64,000 nt of DNA, from positions 1,116,001 to 1,180,000 of the forward strand of contig NC_087246.1 of NCBI RefSeq assembly GCF_037042905.1. Direction: 5' to 3'. Within the stretch, counting starts at the first letter, position 1, and each line of letters begins with the position of its first letter. A program made the position numbers and the translations under genes. The notes under the pieces are model-generated. The model was not told the origin of the DNA and searched no databases. It saw nothing but the letters and a program-made list of their open reading frames with translations. This stretch comes from Lytechinus pictus. Lineage: Eukaryota. Below are positions 48,601 through 60,600 of the stretch, piece by piece.

Positions 48601-51600
48601 ATGTAAAGGTTTTACTGAGAGAATAAAACAATTTGAATTTGAATTTGAATTTGAATACCCTTCCTGTTGATAATTTTTTGACAATGACTAAAGCAAGGCT
48701 ACTACTAGACTGATAAATCCAATGTTTTGGAGGAGTTTTTTTCAAAATTTTCTGAATTTTTTTGTCCTCCTCCTACACAGACAGATGATGGCCATTGCGC
48801 TCATAATGCAGCCTTCTACCATAGTCCATTTCCTTCAGGGTTGGTACTAGTTTGGTTGCTCGTCGCTGGACTTTCTCAACAGCCTTCAAGTCAGGAGCAT
48901 ATCGTAGGTACCATATTCCGTTCGCGTATTCCAGAATTGATGTCACAAGTGACCTGTACAACCTCTTGATGTTTTCTTTGTCTCTATGCAAGAAAGTGCG
49001 TCGAATCATAGCGAGCACACAATTTGCTTTCAAGACTGTGAATGATATGAATCAAATTTTCGCTAATATTCCTCAAATACTACTTAAGCGCTGATTTTTC
49101 TTCTCGTTGACGAACTATGGAGTTTAGATGTTGTTTGAAGGTTTCCATGGTGGCATGTACAATCGCTGATGTGGTTTACGGTACACCATGTGGAGTATTA
49201 TAGAAACAGTGGATAGAAGAAGAAAAAGAAAAAGAAAACAGAAATGGATAGGCGAGAAAGTGGAAATTTGAGAGTAGAGTAATCTTTCTTGAATGTAGTC
49301 CTGAAAAGGACTGTAAACCAGAAGAGATTGATGAGTTGAAACAGCTTGACTAGTAGGATGGATGAGGTGCTGGCTTGAGTCGGCGAGTAGAGATGATGAG
49401 CAGAAGCAGTAGAGAGACTCGACGTTTCGGGCAGGTTGACTGTCCGTCTTCAGTTTACTCGCCGTTTCCCAATTTTTCGTCTCAAGAGGGTGCGCAATTC
49501 ATATTCATATCAAAGACACTACAAGGGAAAGACTAGGCACCAAAATCATTTTACACTTAAATCGATGCAAAGCATTACGCGGAGTCTGCAAAGTGTCCAA
49601 TCTTTCATTATAGAGCTGAATTAAGGTTGTGAATTGTATTAGCGCCACCATCGAGCTTCCTTTTATTTCCATGGTAGAGACATGTGAAGCCACTTTCCAG
49701 GCCGAGGTAGGCGAATTTGCTTGTTTAAGTCGTTTTATGTGCTTTTTATAGAAAAAAATAATAAAACAATTAAAAACGGATAGCCACTAACTCCAGTAAC
49801 TGGAAAGAGCCCCAGTGAGTAGCGGAATGAGTTTCCGCCAACATTATTCCTGTTATGCAGCGATGTTAACCGACTACTAAAAAAAAAAAAAATTGTGTAA
49901 TCACGTTTGTAACGCAAAGTTGATATAACATACTAATCTCGCAATAGATGTGAGTGGGCTACTACTATTAGTATTAGGCCAAATCCTTTTTAATTCTCTT
50001 TATTCAATCCTTCCTTTAATTTCTTTCTTTTTCTTTTCTTTTGATCTTTTTAATTGTTATCTCCATCTTTCCTTTATTTTGTTTCAAGATTGTGATCTGA
50101 GCTGAATTAGTCAGATCACTAAAATGGCCTTCTCTCCAACCATGAAGAAAGGACAGCAGACTAACCTTATTCTACAAATCTCACCATAAAAGGAAGCCGC
50201 TGTAAACATCCCTGAATATGTGTTGGAAGCACCAAGATCAGTAAGAGCCAACAACAGCCGATTGGTACCACTTCAATGTGGAACAAAAGCCTACCTCAAT
50301 AGTTTTATACCAAATACAATAAAAGACTGAAACAATCTCCCACCAGAAATAAACTAGCACATCACTGATGTGGAGCTCATCCGGCATCTCGCAGCAAAAT
50401 TTAACACAATTTTTAACTTCAGCCCAGTTGACACTGTAGTGAACTATATTGGTGACATGAATTGAGGAAACAGAATTGAAATTGGTGAACCTCATGAGGC
50501 TCTCAGATGGAACCAAAAAATCAAAATCTGTCAACAAATAAATAAGCATTTTTGTAAGTTTTGAAAAATATGCATAAATTAACATATCTAATGAGTTTCT
50601 AAGTTCTGTGTAGAAACTTAGTATGACCACCTAGAGCTGACATATATTTAAGCAAACAAATTTGAAATTGATCAACAAATGAAGGAGAAAAGGTATTTTT
50701 TGTGATTTATGAATAAATTTTGCATAAATTAGCATAAATAATCTTCTAGCCAAAATTTCAAAATTCTGTGTGGAAACTTGGTTACCCTCATGTAGCTCTA
50801 CCAAATGGATGAAAAAAAAAATCAAAATTGGTCAACAATTAAAGAGGCATTTTCTATGATTTATGAATAAATTTCCAATAAATTAGCATGAATAATTTTA
50901 TACTCGAAATTTTAAAATTCTGTTAAAAAGTTTGGTGAACCCCATGAAGCTCTACAAGATGGAAGAAAATAAAATAAAATAATAGACAGTTCTTGTATAG
51001 CGCATAACACATAATGAATAACATCTCTATGCGCTTCCAAAGGACTTGGATTATTACCCCAGCTGTAGCTCAAGCAGCTTTCATGCACTCGGCATTTCAA
51101 GGAATAAATTCCTGCCAGGTACCCATTCACCTCACCTGGGTTGAGTGCAGCACAATGTGGATTAATTTCTTGATGAAGGAAACCACGCCATGGCTGGGAT
51201 TTGAAAAAAAATTCAAAATCGATAAACAAAGAAGAAGCATTTTATGTGAAGTTTTAAAAATACATTGTATGCATAAATTAGCATTAAAAAATTTTTTAGT
51301 CAAAATTTTAAAATTCTGTGTAGAAGTTTGGTGAAACTCATGAAGCTCTACCAGAAGAAAGCAAAAAATCAAAATCAGTCAACAAATAAAGAAGGAGGAG
51401 CATTTTTGTGAATTTTGAAAATTGTGCAAAATTTAGCATATATAATGAGTTTCAAAATTTTGTGTAGTAGTTTTGAATCCCCACCTAGTGCTATCATATA
51501 TAGCAAACAGAATTGAAATTGGACTTGAAATGACGAAGAAGTATTTTGAAATTCGGTCAACAAATAAATAAGAGGCATTCTCTATGATTTATGAATAAAT

Positions 51601-54600
51601 TTCGCAAAAAATGAGCATGAATACTTTTCTACTCGAAATTTCAAAATTCTGATCAGAAGTTTGGTGCACCTCATTCAGCTCTACAAGATGGAAGAAAAAA
51701 AAATCGGTCAACAAATAAAGAAGCATATTTTAATATGACATTTTAAAATATACATAAATTAATTTCGCATAAATTAGCATAAAAATATTTCTAGTCAAAA
51801 TTTCGAAATTCTGTGTAAAAGCTTGGTGAACCTCATGAAGCTCTACCAGTCCAGATGGAAGCAAAAAAGATGTACCTCTCCTTCTTTCAAAATTCATAAC
51901 AAAATGGCCGATCGAGACTGGGTTAGGAGAGGTATCGCGTGTGGTAAAATGTACCACAGTCTGGGGCACGCGCGACTGCTCCCTACATACATGTAGTACT
52001 GTGGGATGGGTTGGAGCAACTGCCTCCTTGGTTGGAGCATAGAATACACATGTACTATGGGCTAGAGGCTGTGTTGTGTGCACACAACAATAGACCCAAA
52101 CCCCCAAGCCCTGTGCATTCATCCATGCTTGGGTGCACAACTCAGGTCTCAGCATAGCTGCATAGTCAGGCCAGCCAAGGGATCTGATCATCACTTGGAG
52201 AGTCGACCGGTGCGAGACAAGGACGTCTGTGTTTACACTTACTATACCTTCTGCTTCGCCCGTTCGCCCTTCGGGTTTCATCTAGTTGCGGCAATTATAC
52301 ATCACATCGGCAATTATACATCTACACCAAGAATACGTCACACCAGCAATATCCACAAGTTATTTAGGCCTGCTTTTTGGTTACCGTATCTTTATTTCAA
52401 CGTGCCTTGCACCAACTTCCTACTGGTGAGTATATCTGTGAACCTTCCTCCTGTTAACCCCACTTTCCACTCTTTCCCTCACAGGATATATATACTAATA
52501 CCCCAAAAATTACCACAGTGGCGCTTGCGAACCTTACTTTGCGCGAATTGGTATCCCATTGGATTTCAATTCATTTTCATTTTGATTTATTTTGAGTGTG
52601 TTTTGGGAGTGTTCTTCTTCCTTCATAAATTTTTGGAAGGGGGTAGATATTGGATATATTTAGAGTGTTTAAAAGATCAAAAATACATTGTGCTTTTGAT
52701 TTTGTATTGCTTGTGATATGATAGTGATATTCTGATTAAATTTCTGAATGCTTGTTGTGTTGCATGGGAGTGAGACTCCACAAATAAATTTGTATTTTTG
52801 ACATTTTGCAAAGCATTATTTTTACATTGGCTTTGAACGTGGTGTCTTGTGTTGAGTTAGATGGTCAGTCCATCTTCCTTTTACAGCATTTGTACAACAC
52901 GTCCCAAGTCAATCCTTGTCTTTTATACGCAATTTGTTTGTTTTTTATTCAAAACTTGAATTAATTTTACTGTCAAACTTTAGTGGGATAATTATATCAA
53001 ATTTGTTTCAAGATTATCACAGCTATCAATCTTGTAATATTTCCCAAATTGCGCAAAATTGTGATTTTTAGAATAGATTTTCTAGTCTCTTTCCCATGTT
53101 TTGTTTGTGTCATTTTTGAGTGACTCTGAGTGCTGAATTTTCATGCTCTTTGCTGTGTTTTGTTTTTGAATTTTTGCCTCGGGCGTGGCTCAGTTAGTGA
53201 ATGGACCAAGCTGAATTGTGCTTGTTTTCTTTCACTTGTTAATAGCTGAGCATTAATTCAATAGTTTGGTGATTGTTATATTTTATGTATAGTCACCACA
53301 TTTTCCAATTTGAAATAATTCTGTTTTCTGGATTAAAATAAAATACCCGGTAGGTGGATACAATATTTTCAACCATTTTTCAAGGAAGTTCCTTGTTTAA
53401 AACAAAGATATAACTGTTTGGATACTTTGCTTGATTTTAGGAATTGAAACTGGATAGAGTCATAGACTATATTTGATTTTCTTGCTATTGAATCTCAAGG
53501 TGGGATTAGGAATTTAATTTTCCGCTTTGAATTTTATATTATTCCACGTACAATTTCAAATTGTTCTGTGCTGAATGCAATTTCATAATAGGAAGGCATT
53601 TTCTACCTAGAATTTTATATTCTGGTATATATTTCTTGCTTTTCACTGTGAGCGGTTTGAGTTTTAGAACCAAGCAATTTTGCAAAGAATTTTCTGTTAG
53701 GTCAAATTGGGTTTCATGTTTTTGAAATACTTTTGATCAAACTGTGGAGGATACCACATGTTTTATAGAAGTCGATGGCAGACCTCTTCCACTTGGTGTA
53801 CTAAAGATAAAGTTTCTGTTTTAGACAAACCAAGTTATGATGGCATTAATGGAAGTTGGGAAGTTTTTCTTCAACAATTTTCTCGGTATGCCGATAAGGC
53901 AGGTTGGACCGCCAGGCAGAGAATCAATAATTTATATTTGTGTTTGCAGGGGCAAGCAGCTGAATTTTGTGCAGCTATATTTGAAAGCAACCCCAAAATT
54001 GATTTCTTTGATTTAGTTTTTGAATTGGGAAATAGGTTTGGACATGATCCACCTAATACATTCCCTCAAAATGTTCAAACCCATCAAAGATGGCATAGTT
54101 CTTTTGTAAGCCCGTTTACTTATTTTCCCAGCCCAAGAACACAATCTCCAGTTCAGGTTACCCCTAATATTTTGGAGGATTCTACCCCAAAGTCATGTAG
54201 CTATTCAAGGGACTCTGATGGAGTTGGAAAGTCTCAATGGAAAACTGAGATGGCCTCTATTAATAACAAGTTAGACAATCTCATTAGTACGCTTTCTGAA
54301 CTTTCCAAATCTAATAACCACCCAAACTGGGAAGGGTTGAAGATAGAGGCCGACCTTCAACCTTAAAAACAGAAGGCCAGGGTTCCATATTAAGCAAAAA
54401 GAATTTGGATCCACCCAAATCTGGTAGTCTGATCTCTGGCAATGGGGAGGGCTTTGACCCAACAGTTGAAATAAATGTGGCTTTGACCACAGCTCTTGAA
54501 ACTGAGGGCTCCCAATCCAGTGGGGAGGGTTTTGACCCGAAAGTCGAATCAGATGTGGCTTTGACCACATCTCTTGAAACTAAGGGCTTTGACCCTAAAG

Positions 54601-57600
54601 TTGAATCAGATGTGGCTTTGACCACGTCTCTTGAAACTGAGGGCTCCCAATCCATACCTGACCAGGGATTGACTTCAACCGTAAGGGTGAAGCTTGATCT
54701 GAGCAACAAAATAGATGAAGGTGTTTCCTCATTTTCTAGTGAGGGTCCATGCTTAATTGTTAATGCACCTATTATTTCTGAATCTGCAAATGAGCAGTGC
54801 AAAGATCTTATTTCTGATCCTTTATTTTTAAGTCCTAAAGTGGTAGAAAGAGAAGCCACTCCAGCCAAAACAGAATTGCCAGCTGATGTAAATAAAATGA
54901 CTGTCAATTCTAACATTTCTGATAGTTCAGAAATTACCATTCAATCTAAGCCGAATTTGTATTATGTAAATATGTGTAAGATTGGGTTGAATTTGTTAGG
55001 ATTTAATCCTAACCCACATAAGCATGCAGTGTACTGGGATAGCGCTGTAGCTTTTCAGCTGCATCAAAGTCACGGGTGGAGTGACCCACTACTGTATTTT
55101 GGCATTGAGCGTGATCACCGTTGCTATCCTTTTAGGTTGTACGGTACCACCTTGGTACCACCGTGGAATTGCATAGATGATTTATTTTGCCCGCATACAT
55201 TCAAGAAAATGTACTTTGGCATTGATCATTTTATGTTGCTATAATTTGATAATTATTGATAAGGGATATGAGTGCTGGAGGAAATTCTCATAACATTCCT
55301 TTTGCAGTTATTACTTAGAGACAAATTGTCTGGTATTCATTGATCAATTTTTTTACTAAGGAATTTACACCATTGCTTGATATTCATATTTTGTACCAAG
55401 ATTGATTTAAATTTAAAAGCATGGTGTTCTAAATATTCACACCTGAAGATTGACTTCCAGTTGTGATTAGGAATCAAGAGCTGAGAAGCAGAGAAAGTAT
55501 TTCTTTTGCTCAATGACTCTAACCCTAATCATGATTTGATTTTAACTTTATAAAAAGATTTCAAGAGAAAAATATCCTGAAGTGTTTTACTTTTTTTTTT
55601 GCATCTAGAATGACCATTCAATCTTTTTATGGAGCACTAAAGCAAGTGAGTGAAAACAATTGCTCTGATATTTTATTATTCACAACATATTTTTCCTGGG
55701 GATATTACCCCTGAATCCTCAAAAATAAAAAGGAGGGGGTAGGGGATAATGAAAATTTCATTAAATATTATTCAGTAAGTTCATTCAGTTCATTAAAGTA
55801 AACCTGTCTGTGAACATTGTTACTTTATCCCTTTAAAGTTTAAATAATTATATTGAGGAATGCTTTTAAAGTTAAGTTTATTCTATCCAAGCTTAACATG
55901 CGCATATAACATACAGCCCACCATTTAGGTTTTATCAAAAGGGGTAAAATGCTTTTGAATTCAAAATGATTCAAAGTTATTTCCATTGATAATGTTTGTA
56001 AGCAGATTCCTCATGTTATTGTGTTCAAAGCTTTTATACAAAACTACTCCCCTTTTAATTAGGCAGATGCTTTAGATAATTTCATTCAGTGCTTTCTATA
56101 GAAAGTTATTTCCATTGATTAACAGGTTCTTCAATCAATTGGAAGATCTGCAGAAAGCATCCGAAAATAAGCTATTGATCAATTTCCATCAAATAATACA
56201 AACAAATGTATTTCTTTTGTTCAAAGTTTCTTAAGCAGACCCTCTGAATATTTGAGAGCAGACTTGAGAAACATCCAAATTTATTGTCTCCAACCCTGGG
56301 ATTTCTTCCATTTAATTGCAGAACATAAATAATAGATTGGAATTGCTATTGTATATAGAAAGGTAGGGCAATCTAATTGTTTAAGGGTGACCCCAACTTT
56401 TCAGACTAAAGGTGAAAGCATTGTAAATGGCTCACCTTTGGTGCAATTCCTCTTCCAGGGCAATGAGTTATGTAATTTGCATTCTTTTCTTTAAGAATCT
56501 TGCAGGGGCTACAGTAGATACAATAGTTCATAGGAAGCCAAGTCTATCCGAATTAATCTTAATTGTTAATCAGGGGTGTTACCAGGGAGTTCCAATTGAG
56601 TTGGTTTATTCAGTACATATTTATTTTGAGAGTACTTGTTATTTCCCATGTGCTTGTCCATGGTCAAAATACATGTAGTTACCTCGGAATATTTTTTGTG
56701 CTGATGAACTAATAATGTCTTTGTTAGAGTAGCTGCAAAATTGACATTCATTTTCTAAAATCTGACATTTTACTATCACTCAGAATGTCATTGACATCAT
56801 TGAATACAATTCTTCTTTAACATTGACATAAGTCACTTATCATAATGGGACACATTTTTAATGATTATGCTATAAATCATTAAATAACCTGAAAAGCTGA
56901 CACTGTCTTAACATTGATATTGTAATTAGAGACAAGAGTTACATGAATGTAAACACTTGTCAATATATCTTTTTGATAGATGGGGTTTTTATTTGTGGTC
57001 TTTTATTGAATTAGTTAATGAATAGAACTTATACCTTGAGCAAATGAGTTTCCAGTCCATTGCTTCCAAAATGTTTGAGTAATTTACAAATATTATGCTA
57101 TATTTGGGCGCAATATTCCTGGGATTATTTAATGTAGGTTAGTGTGTATAAGGTCTTGAATTTTATGACTTCAGACTTCATCATTTTGCAGGGTTATTCA
57201 TTTTTAAACTTCACGACCAGAATGTCTTTTTCTTTATTCTGGTTATAGCCTCCTTGGGAATCTGTTAACTTATGGATTTCTGCAAGGAAGATATAAGAAT
57301 CGTTGAAAATAAAGCAAATTGATAGAGTTCAATGAGGTCCTCTTTTTACTGGATAGATGACAAATATTAACAGATTCTCCTAAATCTGATTGTTCGTCTC
57401 TTGGCAATGAGGGCGGAGATCCATCGAAGGACTCCAGACCCAATCCTGGCCGAGGACAAGCCCCAGAAGTTGGGATTTGTATTTATTCAGTAATATTAAT
57501 CAAGCCCCAAATCTAAATGTCTAAGAATTTATCTTTATGGAAGGGATTAAGACTAAAACAAATTTTATAGAAATTTTGTCAGACCTTTGGGTCAACTATT

Positions 57601-60600
57601 TTGCTGGCTGCTGCAAGCATGCGTTCATATGTACATTACAAATTGTAGACATTCCAGTATTCCTGGGATGAGGTTAAGCTTGTCAAGTGAAGTGTTTAAC
57701 AATCAAAGGATCCTTTCATAAATTCACATTGATGAGCTACCCCATTAACTGTCTGCTCAGAAAGCTTAAACTTTTTCACAAGAATTATTTTTCTGGTTTA
57801 AAATTAAATGTACACATCGGCTTTTGTAAACAATTGTTAGGGTGTCTTTCCCTTACAGGAGTAAAGATTTCTAGATCTTGACTTGTGTAGGGTGATAGTA
57901 CGCCAACAAAGTCATTCTCCCTAGATTTCTTATTTACATTGGTCAACTTCTTTACAATTGACCACGTTTTCATCTTATGAATATGAGATATCATTCCTGG
58001 GATTTCCTCTTGGAAGTCAAGTTCCAATAATGATGGGATTAAGACTTGCAACAATTGTTGTAGCAAATCCAGTCGTTTGGCTAGAACTTGCAGTGAAAGT
58101 TGAGTCTAGAACCTGCAGACAAACTCGTGGTCTAGAACTTGCAGGGAAAGTCAGGTCTAGAACTTGCAGAGAAACTTGTGGTCTAGAACTTGCAGGGAAG
58201 TCAAGTCTAGCAGTACAATCGGTTGCAGACAATCTAGTACAGAACTAGAGTCAAGACACAGCTATGACTTGTGCTAGACTTCAAATCTCGTACTACATTG
58301 TGTTTTTTTAAAACTGGTCAGTTTCTGACCTGTCGCAATACTTCGGCAGCAACATCTGTATTTGACGCAATTGCGTGGAAGCATTAAGTAAGTCTTCCCA
58401 AGCATTTTAGAAAATATGCATTTCATGTATTCTTTATATCCCTTGCGGGCGAAAGGCTTGACCTTCGCTCTTCTTGCAGTCCATTTTGATATTAATATTT
58501 TTGCAAAACTTTAGAAACTCCCTTGTAGTCTCGGTATTAGCATCAAGCTTATCATGTGGCAGCGTATGTTTGATTAAAATACTTGTATTAAAAAGTCACA
58601 TTGATAAGTCTCCCCTTGACCTTTTACCTGAGAAGTTGGATAGTTCTTTTATTTAAAATAAATTTGGGCATATAAATATACTGACTTAATGGCATGTTCA
58701 TCCTCTGACCCTTGCGACTCCAGACAGTTTCTTACAAACATCTGAGAGCGGCAGTGGATTAACATTTATCGTTCCCTCCTTTCACTGAGGACTGCTTAGA
58801 TCCACATGTGTACATATGACATATGGCCGGACAGTCCAAAAATAGAGGAAGTAACGATGTCCTAAAGTCGGGGGGAGTGTGGTAAAATGTACCACAGTCT
58901 GGGGCACGCGCGACTGCTCCCTACATACATGTAGTACTGTGGGATGGGTTGGAGCAACTGCCTCCTTGGTTGGAGCATAGAATACACATGTACTATGGGC
59001 TAGAGGCTGTGTTGTGTGCACACAACAATAGACCCAAACCCCCAAGCCCTGTGCATTCATCCATGCTTGGGTGCACAACTCAGGTCTCAGCATAGCTGCA
59101 TAGTCAGGCCAGCCAAGGGATCTGATCATCACTTGGAGAGTCGACCGGTGCGAGACAAGGACGTCTGTGTTTACACTTACTATACCTTCTGCTTCGCCCG
59201 TTCGCCCTTCGGGTTTCATCTAGTTGCGGCAATTATACATCACATCGGCAATTATACATCTACACCAAGAATACGTCACACCAGCAATATCCACAAGTTA
59301 TTTAGGCCTGCTTTTTGGTTACCGTATCTTTATTTCAACGTGCCTTGCACCAACTTCCTACTGGTGAGTATATCTGTGAACCTTCCTCCTGTTAACCCCA
59401 CTTTCCACTCTTTCCCTCACAGGATATATATACTTATTACACCTAATTTTACTACACGCGACAGAACTTTTCGTTTTTTTGAGGTTCCAGTCTGTGCCTC
59501 GATGTCAGGATGCTGTCACACGATAGACCTTCATCCATATAATCGTGGTAAGTGCATAATTTCACATTTTTAAAGTAAGTTATTGAGACCCCAATCTACC
59601 CCAGTCCCGTGTCTATGTCTAAATGCACGGTGGACTCCTGGGCTCTGGCCCGCTCCCTGGGTTAATTTTACCCATATGTTTTCTACACAGCAACGTGCGA
59701 TGGTTTACGTACTCAACGCTAGTGGATGTCCTTCCCCATGAGCATTTATCAAGTGTTTCAAAAAAATCGCTGAAGTGTCCGATCTTCCCCTTGTAGTATC
59801 TTTGACGTAAGCGACATCACATCTAGAATTCTAGATACTAAGATAGTGCTTCTGAGTGATGTCTGAATTACCCCTTTCTCAGTTTCTGATTGAGATTCAG
59901 CCGAGAAGAGATTCTTGTGATTAAAATATTAAATAATTAAACTGCAGACAAAAAGGTGCATTTTGATTGGACATTATCCCCCCCAAAAAAAATTGTTGAA
60001 GATGAGTAATGGGTGGTCCTGGCTTAGTTTTAGGCCCTACAATACAAAGATAAGATCGTGTTTCAAGTACGATGATAATGATACACCAACCTGGTGGACT
60101 GTACAGTACTTTAACGTAGCCAGGCGGCTTCTTGAGAGTAAAAATCATTTACTCACGTAGGCTTAGTCTCAATGAAGCCAGGGAGTCCCCCAAAACCTGA
60201 AACTTTCACCCCCGAGATTTCTACTTTCCTTCTAAAAGATCTAGCTATAGCTATAAATCATGTACACGCGAGCGTCGCGTAACGTTGGGGAAGTACAATA
60301 AGAAACAAGATGGCGGCGTAAACATCGGGCAAGTCTCTTCCGTCTTTTCACAATATTTTTTCATTTTTTTGATGAATTCTTATTTAAAAATAACGAGAGC
60401 GTAGAAATGTCGGAAATGAAATTTTATCCCATGATGTACATGATTTATGGCTAGAATAGATGTAAGTAGAAATCTCGGGGGCGAAAGTTTCAGGGGTTTT
60501 TGCGGTACACGCACATGAATAGGAAGGACTCCCTGGCTTCATTGAGAGTAAGCCTACGTTATTAAATGATTTTTACTATCAAGAAGCTGCCTGGCTACTT

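What the first reader, a model, noticed from the sequence alone, without database searches (positions are those of the whole stretch)
51940..59456. LTRs identical for ~557 bp but with different terminal ~22 nt, which canonical LTR reverse transcription does not predict
Seen: by eye, 51940-52496 equals 58878-59434. The 5' LTR then ends AATACCCCAAAAATTACCACA and the 3' LTR ends TATTACACCTAATTTTACTACA (~7 differences in 22 nt). Both keep an ACA terminus, and the TSD CGCG is intact. Established: in Ty3/Gypsy replication both U5 ends derive from one minus strong-stop DNA and are identical at insertion. Ageing would scatter changes along the LTR. Inference: the two ends may be inherited separately. 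For example, the 3' att end could be copied from an RNA running to the end of the 3' LTR, while the PBS-adjacent end is copied from the intact 5' RNA. That would be a non-canonical priming/strand-transfer route. Alternatives are template switching with a co-packaged helper RNA, or gene conversion homogenising the LTR bodies.
Basis: partly seen in the sequence, partly recalled or inferred. Interest (0 to 1): 0.8.

Follow-up and report, generated by a model that had tools for sequence, protein, structure and literature searches.

The report
Born-asymmetric LTRs from helper co-packaging
A young, non-autonomous LTR retrotransposon has two LTRs that match perfectly except for their last 22 bases: the 3' end looks like the candidate helper element's and the 5' end looks like the element's own. 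This pattern recurs across the family, suggests reverse transcription from two co-packaged RNAs can make LTRs unequal at birth, and would make LTR-based dating unreliable.

Summary
The 5' LTR (51940-52517) and 3' LTR (58878-59456) are identical for 557 bp. They then differ at 7 of the last 22 positions. The CGCG target-site duplication (TSD) is intact.

- **What the element is:** a 7.5-kb non-autonomous LTR retrotransposon with a gag-like ORF and no pol. About 19 copies exist in an 812-Mb eukaryotic genome.
- **Not a fixed asymmetry, not a one-off:** of 13 copies compared, 7 have equal LTRs. Six, all with intact 4-bp TSDs, have identical left parts (U3, with pair-private variants) and right parts that differ from a breakpoint to the very end. 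The breakpoints lie at about position 250-260 (four copies), 532 and 557.
- **The breakpoint fits a U3/R border:** position ~249 is also where similarity begins to the LTRs of 10-12 kb elements. These share the PBS, the leader and a gag relative, and are the candidate helper.
- **The two tails have different sources:** the 3' tail ends ACTACA on an "alpha" R-U5. That is the state next to the PBS in four helper-type elements. The 5' tail ends ACCACA, as in 19 of 20 non-autonomous 5' LTRs.

[quoted passage not shown] The PBS-proximal U5 of the 5' LTR was copied from the non-autonomous RNA.

Main rival: gene conversion after insertion. Raw DNA reads could not be checked.

The parts
51936..51939 (+). 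Upstream copy of the 4-bp target-site duplication, CGCG
   Evidence: The same CGCG lies at 59457-59460. Reads from paralogous flank repeats join the two flanks.
51940..52517 (+). 5' LTR, 578 bp, TGTGG...ACCACA
51940..52187 (+). Left part of the LTR (positions 1-248), nearly invariant across the family. Inferred to be U3.
   Evidence: Variability profile. Similarity to helper-type LTRs starts at position 249. Pair-private variants are shared by both LTRs of the asymmetric copies.
52188..52496 (+). Right part of the LTR up to the breakpoint, inferred to be R and most of U5. It is 'alpha' type, 95-96% identical to both LTRs of helper-type elements.
52497..52517 (+). 5' tail, AATACCCCAAAAATTACCACA. 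Non-autonomous-type U5 end (ACCACA).
   Evidence: This exact form occurs only here, and both LTRs of the C2:5805515/5812531 copy differ from it by one base. ACCACA sits next to the PBS in 19 non-autonomous 5' LTRs. Run X1's contig covers it unchanged.
52518..52533 (+). G spacer plus primer-binding site, TGGCGCTTGCGA.... About 11 nt are complementary to the 3' end of tRNA-Ser(CGA), with a 1-nt bulge.
   Evidence: The tRNA-Ser(CGA) gene was found at G000:C15:12435132-12435213, and its 3' 18 nt (with CCA) are the exact complement of the 18-mer TGGCGCTGCGAGCAGGGT seen at aberrant junctions in other copies.
53758..54366 (+). ORF1, 202 aa, gag-like
   Evidence: No Pfam match. It is 47-48% identical over about 90 aa to 547-549 aa ORFs of the 10-12 kb helper-type elements. 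It also has weaker matches to many 500-2165 aa ORFs in the genome.
54405..55244 (+). ORF2, 279 aa (308 aa stop to stop). Conserved in the family, contains tandem repeats, function unknown.
58870..58877 (+). Polypurine tract, GGGGGGAG, directly before the 3' LTR
   Evidence: The same flank (agtcggggggag) precedes all sampled 3' LTRs.
58878..59456 (+). 3' LTR, 579 bp, TGTGG...ACTACA
59435..59456 (+). 3' tail, TATTACACCTAATTTTACTACA. Helper-type U5 end (ACTACA).
   Evidence: The exact 23-mer occurs only here and in the 3' LTR at C9:15915064. ACTACA lies next to the PBS in helper-type elements C4:29626059, C5:30437336, C16:7190224 and C5:48125654.
59457..59460 (+). Downstream copy of the TSD, CGCG

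Best explanation
The element is a recently inserted non-autonomous LTR retrotransposon whose two LTRs were unequal from the moment of insertion.

Proposed steps, all inferred:
1. Its RNA (B) was packaged together with an RNA (A) that carried a helper-type 5' end.
2. Minus-strand strong-stop DNA was primed by tRNA-Ser on A. It therefore carried A's R-U5, of alpha type and ending ACTACA.
3. That DNA jumped to the 3' R of B and copied B's U3 and interior. This gives the 3' LTR: U3 of B plus R-U5 of A.
4. At B's 5' end the minus strand did not stop at the PBS. It ran on into B's own, still intact U5. Here it ran about 22 nt. In one sister copy it ran about 52 nt. In four others it ran through the whole R-U5, up to the RNA's 5' end at about LTR position 250-258.
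5. Plus-strand strong-stop DNA (U3 of B plus R-U5 of A plus an 18-nt tRNA copy) then paired with this longer minus-strand end.
6. The PBS-proximal stretch was inherited from the minus strand, just as the family's imperfect PBS is always inherited from the RNA and not from the tRNA.

The result is a 5' LTR with the same U3 (and here the same alpha body) as the 3' LTR, but with B's own ACCACA tail.

What is shown:
- the anatomy of the element;
- the recurrence of the pattern in the family;
- the shared private U3 variants;
- the helper-type state of the 3' ends and the own-type state of the 5' ends;
- the pervasive mosaicism of the copies;
- fossil junctions that hold tRNA-copied 18-mers.

What is inferred:
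- co-packaging;
- read-through of the PBS;
- how the mismatched stretch was resolved.

A close variant also fits: a template switch of the growing plus-strand strong-stop DNA onto a second, untransferred minus-strand strong-stop DNA.
For: 1. **Six of 13 copies are asymmetric.** All six have matching 4-bp TSDs. Their LTRs are identical on the left and differ from a breakpoint to the last base. The reverse pattern is never seen.
2. **Both U3s came from one template.** In three asymmetric pairs the left parts share a variant seen in no other sampled LTR (A at position 196 in one pair, A at 209 in another, T at 164 in the third). One pair has 0 differences left of column 257 and 66 to the right, p about 3e-17 under uniform scatter. 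Age therefore does not explain the divergence.
3. **The breakpoints fit a U3/R border.** Four breakpoints fall in position intervals 251-258, 259-261, 165-258 and 210-276. Similarity to helper-type LTRs starts at position 249.
4. **The alpha R-U5 matches helper-type LTRs.** The alpha R-U5 of this element is 95-96% identical to both LTRs of helper-type elements C16:7179894/7190284 and C5:30437073/30447534. Non-alpha family copies reach only 78-85%. These elements carry a 547-549 aa gag relative and share the PBS, leader and PPT.
5. **The two end states sort by element type.** ACTACA next to the PBS occurs in 4 of 6 helper-type 5' junctions but in 1 of 20 non-autonomous ones, Fisher p = 0.005. 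Within the non-autonomous family ACTACA sits in the 3' LTR of all four alpha elements.
6. **Alpha elements are asymmetric more often.** Four of 4 alpha elements are asymmetric, against 2 of 9 non-alpha elements, p = 0.02. A fifth alpha copy (C9:9874392) has a rearranged 5' LTR.
7. **The element is a recent mosaic.** It consists of blocks 100% identical to different extant copies. Templates from different copies were therefore combined often and recently.
8. **Fossil intermediates exist.** In copy C8:3186, the order is outer LTR, then the exact 18-nt complement of the tRNA-Ser 3' end, then an inner partial LTR (positions 91-578) of a different R-U5 type, then the PBS and leader. The whole is flanked by one TSD. 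In three other copies the same 18-mer is followed by three other sequences.
9. **The LTR end is the most shuffled part.** Haplotype richness is highest in the last 50 nt of the LTR, with 18-20 types among 25 sequences. That fits frequent exchange next to the PBS.
10. **There is a precedent in retroviruses.** Asymmetric LTRs arising from two-genome reverse transcription have been reported or proposed for HIV-1 (PMC9278108, PMC5651808).
Against: - No intermediate was observed. The RNA runs gave almost no reads on the element, so the TSS, the poly(A) site and co-expression with the helper are unknown.
- The helper sequences could not be fetched. Their tails are only 88-91% like either tail of this element. 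No 5' LTR in the assembly carries the exact 3' tail, so the actual donor is not identified.
- The helper's pol was not verified.
- One asymmetric copy (C21:1338) has ACTACA at both LTR ends although the rest of its R-U5 differs. Simple read-through predicts an own-type end there, unless its template already had ACTACA.
- LTR positions 1-250 are nearly invariant in the family. The left limits of four breakpoints therefore rest on few informative sites.
- The last 50 nt are A/T-rich and contain a TA repeat, so part of their diversity may be mutational.
- The sample is small (13 elements).
- The canonical literature describes identical LTRs after recombinogenic reverse transcription (PMC6894440).
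Confidence: 0.6

Rival explanations
1. Gene conversion after insertion, from another genomic copy or from free cDNA. The element inserted with two equal, helper-type (alpha, ACTACA) LTRs made by ordinary helper-primed reverse transcription. A conversion tract later entered the 5' LTR at position 557, continued into the leader, and replaced the tail with an own-type one.
For: A tract that crosses the 5' LTR-interior border naturally leaves the left part equal and changes everything up to the LTR end. The copies are mosaics, and conversion could also produce that. Copy C21:1338 keeps ACTACA at both ends while the interior of its R-U5 differs, which looks like a patch with both ends inside the LTR. 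cDNA-mediated conversion of resident elements is known for yeast Ty1 (from my own knowledge, not checked here).
Against: All asymmetric copies are very young, with 0 differences in the shared parts. Conversion would have had to hit 4 of 4 alpha elements but only 2 of 9 others (p = 0.02). No symmetric alpha/alpha non-autonomous copy survives in the sample. No copy shows the mirror pattern (a 3' LTR changed from the interior side with the tail kept) and none shows an internal patch among the seven symmetric copies. The ACTACA base lies 4 nt from the 3' LTR boundary, so conversion cannot have placed it. Reverse transcription from helper-type templates is therefore needed in any case. The complex single-TSD insertions with tRNA-copied 18-mers point to events during reverse transcription.
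Confidence: 0.25
2. Assembly or polishing artefact. One tail was miscorrected with reads from another family copy, or two diverged LTRs were collapsed.
For: The family has about 19 near-identical copies. No raw DNA reads of the assembled individual were available. The 3' tail-flank junction was not checked.
Against: A contig of an independent run reproduces the LTR end, 5' tail, PBS and leader without any change in the tail. The 5' tail is unique in the genome rather than the family majority, so miscorrection toward other copies does not explain it. The exact 3' tail recurs at another locus in the same position. Five other copies on other contigs show the same kind of asymmetry.
Confidence: 0.05
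3. A single RNA runs through the whole 3' LTR, so the 3' end descends from the parent's 3' LTR and the PBS-side end from its 5' LTR. This would be a fixed non-canonical priming route.
For: ACTACA is commoner in 3' LTRs (4 of 13) than in 5' LTRs (1 of 20) of the family, p = 0.07. The 3' interior and U3 are nearly identical among many copies.
Against: Seven of 13 copies are symmetric, and no constant pair of tails exists. The ACTACA/alpha state lies next to the PBS in helper-type elements, which is an ordinary source for U5. No known step copies the 3' U5 of an RNA into DNA. No read-through RNA was seen, although coverage was nearly nil.
Confidence: 0.05
4. Local mutation. Error-prone initiation of reverse transcription, or slippage in the A/T-rich end, changed one tail.
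For: The last 50 nt are the most haplotype-rich part of the LTR and hold a TA repeat and A/T runs. The U5/PBS border is a reported mutation hot spot in Ty1 (from my own knowledge).
Against: Both tails are combinations of variants that pre-exist in other copies. The 3' tail is identical at C9:15915064, and the 5' tail is one base from that of the C2:5805515/5812531 copy. Errors made in minus-strand strong-stop DNA would be copied into both LTRs. Seven changes in 22 nt against none in 557 nt is far beyond known error rates.
Confidence: 0.04

Closest known systems
[quoted passage not shown] 2022, PMC9278108; Cappy et al. 2017, PMC5651808)
   Same: The two LTRs of one integrated copy differ at birth because two templates in one particle contributed to the ends.
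   Different: In HIV-1 the asymmetry is mostly large deletions in the 3' LTR, or whole LTRs of different origin. Here U3 is the same in both LTRs, down to private variants, and only R-U5 or its last 22-52 nt differ. That argues against a simple intermolecular plus-strand transfer. It argues for copying of the acceptor RNA's own U5 (and R).
Recombination during reverse transcription between members of one LTR retrotransposon family (ONSEN and Ty1; Sanchez et al. 2017, PMC5668417; review by Drost and Sanchez 2019, PMC6894440)
   Same: New copies are mosaics of co-expressed, co-packaged parents. The first strand transfer joins the U5-R of one RNA to the U3 of another.
   Different: Those models and data end in two identical LTRs. 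Here almost half of the sampled copies have unequal LTRs.
Autonomous/non-autonomous partnership with exchange of LTR parts ('LTR swapping', soybean SARE/SNRE; Du et al. 2010, Plant Cell; known only from the reference list of PMC6894440 and from memory, text not available)
   Same: A non-autonomous family shares R-U5, PBS, leader and PPT with a longer gag-bearing family, but has its own U3.
   Different: That paper could not be read here, so I cannot say whether it reports unequal LTRs within single elements. The host here is a different, undisclosed eukaryote.
Complex LTR insertions made by template switching (Sabot and Schulman 2007, PMC1950507)
   Same: Sister copies hold three LTRs or partial tandem LTRs inside one TSD.
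   Different: Here the junctions carry the exact 18-nt tRNA-Ser copy. [quoted passage not shown]

Membership tests
LTR retrotransposon (structural definition) | Two direct long terminal repeats with TG...CA ends and short terminal inverted repeats | tested here: met
   LTRs of 578 and 579 bp, TGTGGTAA...TTACCACA / ...ACTACA.
LTR retrotransposon (structural definition) | Target-site duplication flanking the element | tested here: met
   CGCG on both sides. 4-bp TSDs match in 12 of 13 family copies.
LTR retrotransposon (structural definition) | PBS complementary to a tRNA 3' end next to the 5' LTR, and a polypurine tract next to the 3' LTR | tested here: met
   The PBS matches about 11 nt of the tRNA-Ser(CGA) 3' end, and the gene was found at C15:12435132. 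GGGGGGAG precedes the 3' LTR.
Autonomous LTR retrotransposon | Encodes pol (protease, reverse transcriptase, RNase H, integrase) | tested here: not met
   The longest frames are 308 and 209 aa in this copy and no more than 326 aa in 11 other copies. No Pfam domain was found. The element is therefore non-autonomous (LARD-like).
Ty3/Gypsy (Metaviridae) | Pol domain order RT-RNase H-integrase, and reverse transcriptase phylogeny | not testable with these tools
   The element has no pol. The candidate helper could not be fetched. A 4-bp TSD and a tRNA-Ser PBS are compatible with insect gypsy-group elements (from memory), but they do not define the family.
Canonical LTR replication product | Both LTRs identical at insertion (U3 from the RNA's 3' end, R-U5 from one minus-strand strong-stop DNA) | tested here: not met
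   Six of 13 copies with intact TSDs have identical U3 but different R-U5 or U5 ends, with no sign of age in the shared parts.
Autonomous/non-autonomous partnership | Shared cis-acting sequences (R-U5, PBS, leader, PPT) with a longer coding element | tested here: met
   LTR positions 249-578 (94-96%), the first ~130 nt of the leader (85-89%), the PPT, and a gag relative in 10-12 kb elements. The helper's pol was not verified.
Ectopic (unequal) recombination between two insertions | Flanking TSDs differ | tested here: not met
   TSDs match in all six asymmetric copies. The chance of this is about 4e-15.

The most novel reading that the evidence does not exclude
In this family the second strand transfer regularly uses U5 (and R) homology rather than PBS homology. 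[quoted passage not shown]

On this reading the minus strand routinely reads through the PBS into the acceptor RNA's own U5. The PBS-proximal part of the 5' LTR is then inherited from the genomic RNA. The 3' LTR keeps the U5 of whichever RNA primed synthesis.

That would be a distinct replication route. It would make LTRs unequal at birth whenever helper and passenger RNAs are co-packaged.
Probability: 0.3. Interest if true: 0.75.

Novelty: new variant of a known kind. Interest (0 to 1): 0.6.

Why it matters
- **LTR dating.** Dating by LTR divergence assumes equal LTRs at insertion. Four sister copies here would be dated as old (9-11% LTR divergence), although their U3 halves are identical and their TSDs are perfect.
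- **Filtering of elements.** Rules that discard elements with unequal LTRs, or call them recombinants between two insertions, would misclassify such copies.
- **Mechanism.** The family offers natural markers for which RNA supplies which LTR part. These are the helper-type and own-type U5 ends, the private U3 variants, and the tRNA-copied 18-mers. The question has been studied mostly with engineered retroviral vectors.
- **Helper and passenger exchange.** The data show how a non-autonomous element and its helper keep exchanging cis-acting ends.

Tried and rejected
- **RNA mapping of TSS, poly(A) site and splicing.** Two rRNA-depleted RNA runs gave almost no reads on the element, so nothing can be said.
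- **Raw DNA reads of the assembled individual.** None were offered.
- **Fetching the helper-type elements and six further family copies.** I did not try to read those stretches by other means.
- **Do helper tails equal the 3' tail?** They do not. The 78-nt LTR ends of helper-type copies are 88-91% like either tail.
- **A 5' LTR carrying the exact 3' tail.** None exists in the assembly. The nearest is the C2:4895 copy, with ACCACA at both LTRs.
- **Pfam on four ORFs.** No hits.
- **Earlier notes of this scan.** None were found near the place or by words.
- **Simple intermolecular plus-strand transfer.** Considered and set aside, because both LTRs share private U3 variants.
- **Unequal crossing-over between two insertions.** Rejected on the matching TSDs.
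- **Ageing.** Rejected on the clustering of differences.
- **The 'breakpoint at ~250'.** At first it looked like a pure artefact of the invariant left half. Private variants and the start of helper homology at position 249 restored part of its meaning, but the left limits remain loose.
- **The Plant Cell 2010 paper on LTR swapping.** Not held in the library.

Full report
**1. The observation**

- The 5' LTR is 51940-52517 (578 bp) and the 3' LTR is 58878-59456 (579 bp).
- They are identical over 51940-52496 = 58878-59434. The remaining 21 and 22 nt differ by six substitutions and one indel.
- Both LTRs begin TGTGG and end ACA.
- CGCG flanks both sides.
- G plus TGGCGCTTGCGA (the PBS) follows the 5' LTR. 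GGGGGGAG (the PPT) precedes the 3' LTR.
- Seven differences in one 23-column window of 579 columns has a chance of about 1e-7 under uniform scatter.

**2. What the element is**

The 6.4-kb interior has no long frame. There are two conserved ORFs (202 and 279 aa here, 200-326 aa in eleven other copies) and no pol. Pfam finds nothing.

ORF1 is gag-like. It is 47-48% identical over about 90 aa to 547-549 aa ORFs that lie in 10-12 kb elements. It also matches more weakly many 500-2165 aa frames in the genome.

The element is therefore a non-autonomous LTR retrotransposon. About 19 full copies exist in the 812-Mb genome. The 'Ty3/Gypsy' label is unverified.

**3.

I compared the two LTRs of 13 copies.

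*Symmetric copies.* Seven copies have 0-2 differences between their LTRs.

*Asymmetric copies.* Six copies are asymmetric, and all six have matching 4-bp TSDs.
- This copy: breakpoint at position 557.
- C4:13103766/13110694: identical for 531 columns, then 11 differences in the last 52.
- Four copies (C21:1338, C9:1590, C13:1829, C21:1391): 52-66 differences each, all to the right of about position 250-260.

In no copy is the left part unequal while the right part is equal.

*Caution on the left limit.* LTR positions 1-250 are almost invariant in the whole family, so the left limit of a breakpoint is only loosely defined. Even so:
- Three of the four pairs share a variant in the left part that no other sampled LTR has (positions 196, 209 and 164). 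Both U3 copies of each pair therefore came from one template.
- The four breakpoint intervals are positions 251-258, 259-261, 165-258 and 210-276. All are compatible with a single site.

*Conclusion.* There is no fixed 5'-versus-3' tail sequence, but the asymmetry recurs. It is not ageing: one pair has 0 differences on the left and 66 on the right, p about 3e-17. It is not crossing-over between two insertions, because the TSDs match.

**4. The candidate helper and the origin of the two tails**

A second family shares the cis-acting sequences.
- Members include C16:7179842-7190525, C5:30437073-30447767, C4:29613851-29626352 and C5:41557214-41567979, plus shorter relatives.
- It shares the PPT, the first ~130 nt of the leader, the PBS, and LTR positions 249-578 with this family. 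It does not share positions 1-248.
- This places the likely U3/R border at about position 249, where the four breakpoints lie.

The right part of this element's LTRs (the 'alpha' type) matches some of those elements closely.
- It is 95-96% identical to both LTRs of helper-type C16 and C5:304.
- Non-alpha copies of the non-autonomous family reach only 78-85%.

Exact-pattern searches separate the two end states.
- LTR end ACTACA next to the PBS occurs in four helper-type elements (C4:296, C5:304, C16:719, C5:481) and in one non-autonomous 5' LTR.
- ACCACA next to the PBS occurs in 19 non-autonomous 5' LTRs and in two helper-type elements.
- Fisher p = 0.005.

Within the non-autonomous family, the alpha type ending ACTACA sits in the 3' LTR of four elements, including this one. 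Their 5' LTRs are own-type from position ~258 (two copies), from 532, or from 557. Alpha elements are asymmetric 4 of 4, the others 2 of 9 (p = 0.02). A fifth alpha copy has a rearranged 5' LTR.

So the 3' tail of this element is the helper-type U5 end, and the 5' tail is the family's own.

The exact 3' tail occurs only here and in the 3' LTR at C9:15915064. The 5' tail is unique, one base from both LTRs of the C2:5805515/5812531 copy.

**5. Signs of two-template reverse transcription in the family**

*Mosaic structure.* This element is a patchwork of blocks that are 100% identical to different extant copies. The 3' interior and U3 are nearly the same in many copies. The 5' part is diverse, with ORF1 at 68-100% amino-acid identity.

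*tRNA-copied 18-mers at aberrant junctions.* Four copies carry the 18-mer TGGCGCTGCGAGCAGGGT (with one or two variant bases in two of the copies) directly after an LTR end.
- It is the exact complement of the last 18 nt (with CCA) of a tRNA-Ser(CGA), whose gene lies at C15:12435132-12435213.
- It is followed by four different sequences: LTR position 91, LTR position 506 (twice in tandem), a shortened interior, and a leader that lacks its first ~140 nt.

*A fossil intermediate.* In the C8 copy, the outer LTRs are of one R-U5 type. The inner partial LTR (positions 91-578, next to the normal PBS and leader) is alpha from 258 to 445. All of this lies inside one TSD. This shows a cDNA in which the minus strand had copied the PBS, U5, R and part of U3 of its template, and in which a different R-U5 came with the strong-stop DNA.

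*PBS inheritance.* The normal family PBS matches the tRNA over only about 11 nt. It is never replaced by the 18-mer in regular copies. The minus-strand (RNA-templated) information at the U5/PBS junction is therefore what gets inherited.

*A recombination hot spot.* Haplotype richness peaks in the last 50 nt of the LTR.

**6. Most likely mechanism (confidence about 0.6)**

- Strong-stop DNA was primed on a helper-type RNA and jumped to the non-autonomous RNA.
- The minus strand later read past that RNA's PBS into its own U5. It ran 22 nt here, up to the whole R-U5 in other copies.
- Plus-strand strong-stop DNA paired over this longer homology.
- The PBS-side stretch was fixed from the minus strand.

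A switch of the growing plus-strand strong-stop DNA onto a second strong-stop minus DNA would give the same product. A plain intermolecular plus-strand transfer, as proposed for HIV-1 (PMC9278108, PMC5651808), fits less well. It would bring the helper's U3 into the 5' LTR, and the shared private U3 variants speak against that.

**7. Rivals**

*Gene conversion after insertion (0.25).* It can produce 'left equal, right changed to the end' at a 5' LTR. It would also explain the C21:1338 copy, which has ACTACA at both ends. Against it:
- It would have to hit all alpha elements while they are still free of any point difference.
- It would have to leave no symmetric alpha copy in the sample.
- It leaves no mirror-image or patch pattern elsewhere.
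- It cannot place the ACTACA base 4 nt from the 3' LTR boundary.

*Assembly error (0.05).* It is unlikely. An independent contig covers 52430-52702 with the 5' tail unchanged. The 5' tail is unique in the genome. The pattern recurs at five other loci. The 3' junction, however, was not checked.

**8. Known or new**

- Recombination during reverse transcription, helper/passenger exchange of LTR parts, and complex insertions are all known (PMC5668417, PMC6894440, PMC1950507).
- Asymmetric LTRs have been described for HIV-1 proviruses (PMC9278108).
- I did not find described a retrotransposon family in which nearly half the young copies have an identical U3 but a different R-U5 or U5 end, with the 3' end helper-type and the 5' end own-type.
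- I rate it a new variant of a known kind.
- Practical consequence: LTR divergence would misdate such copies badly.

**9. Limits**

- Only 13 elements were compared.
- Helper sequences were not read and pol was not verified.
- There is no RNA or cDNA evidence and no raw DNA reads.
- The organism was not disclosed.

Noticed in passing
window 50691-51935 and 59461-59600: The element sits inside a high-copy repeat with units of about 154-163 bp (repeat finder families D2, D4 and D6; TRF period 154). In contigs of run X1 the word depth on 51800-51850 is about 1780, against 8-100 on the element. RNA reads from paralogous units join the two flanks without the element.
   Followed up: partly
window 52426-52484 (and 59364-59422): The LTR holds an intron-like 59-nt stretch, GTGAGT...pyrimidine-rich...CACAG, just upstream of the variable tail. 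The two late breakpoints (positions 532 and 557) lie at or just after its 3' end. No RNA reads were available to test for splicing.
   Followed up: no
L017 (C8:31865877-31869372, minus strand) and L030 (C3:74056538-74060107): Single-TSD complex insertions. In one, the order is LTR, 18-nt tRNA-Ser copy, partial LTR (91-578) of another R-U5 type, then PBS. In the other, an LTR is followed by two tandem units of the last ~73 nt of U5, each preceded by the 18-mer. They look like fossil plus-strand strong-stop ends joined at the wrong place.
   Followed up: partly
L013/L031 (C11:28598483-28607358): A three-LTR insertion inside one TSD (CTGG): LTR, 805-bp shortened interior that starts with the tRNA-Ser 18-mer, LTR, full interior, LTR. 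All three LTRs are identical.
   Followed up: partly
G000:C15:12435132-12435213: An 82-nt tRNA-Ser(CGA) gene whose 3' end (with CCA) is the exact complement of the 18-mer. It is the likely primer for this family and its helper.
   Followed up: yes
G000:C9:9881429-9882307: The 5' LTR of another alpha copy (3' LTR at C9:9874392) is rearranged. It holds inverted non-alpha pieces (LTR positions 251-397 and 484-579 on the opposite strand) between its LTR parts. The sequence could not be fetched.
   Followed up: no
LTR tails of all copies: Two common tail alleles, TAAAATTA and TAATTTTA, are reverse complements of each other. This could be a small inversion by strand switching, or just two A/T transversions.
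   Followed up: no
window 54443-54645 and 58081-58210: Tandem repeats inside the element. Units of 78 and 57 nt lie within ORF2 and encode a repeated peptide. [quoted passage not shown]
   Followed up: no
family copies: The 3' half of the element (the last ~2 kb of the interior plus U3) is 98-100% identical among most copies. The 5' half (R-U5, leader, ORF1) falls into deep lineages, with ORF1 at 68-100% amino-acid identity. It looks as if one 3' end has recently spread over diverse 5' parts.
   Followed up: partly
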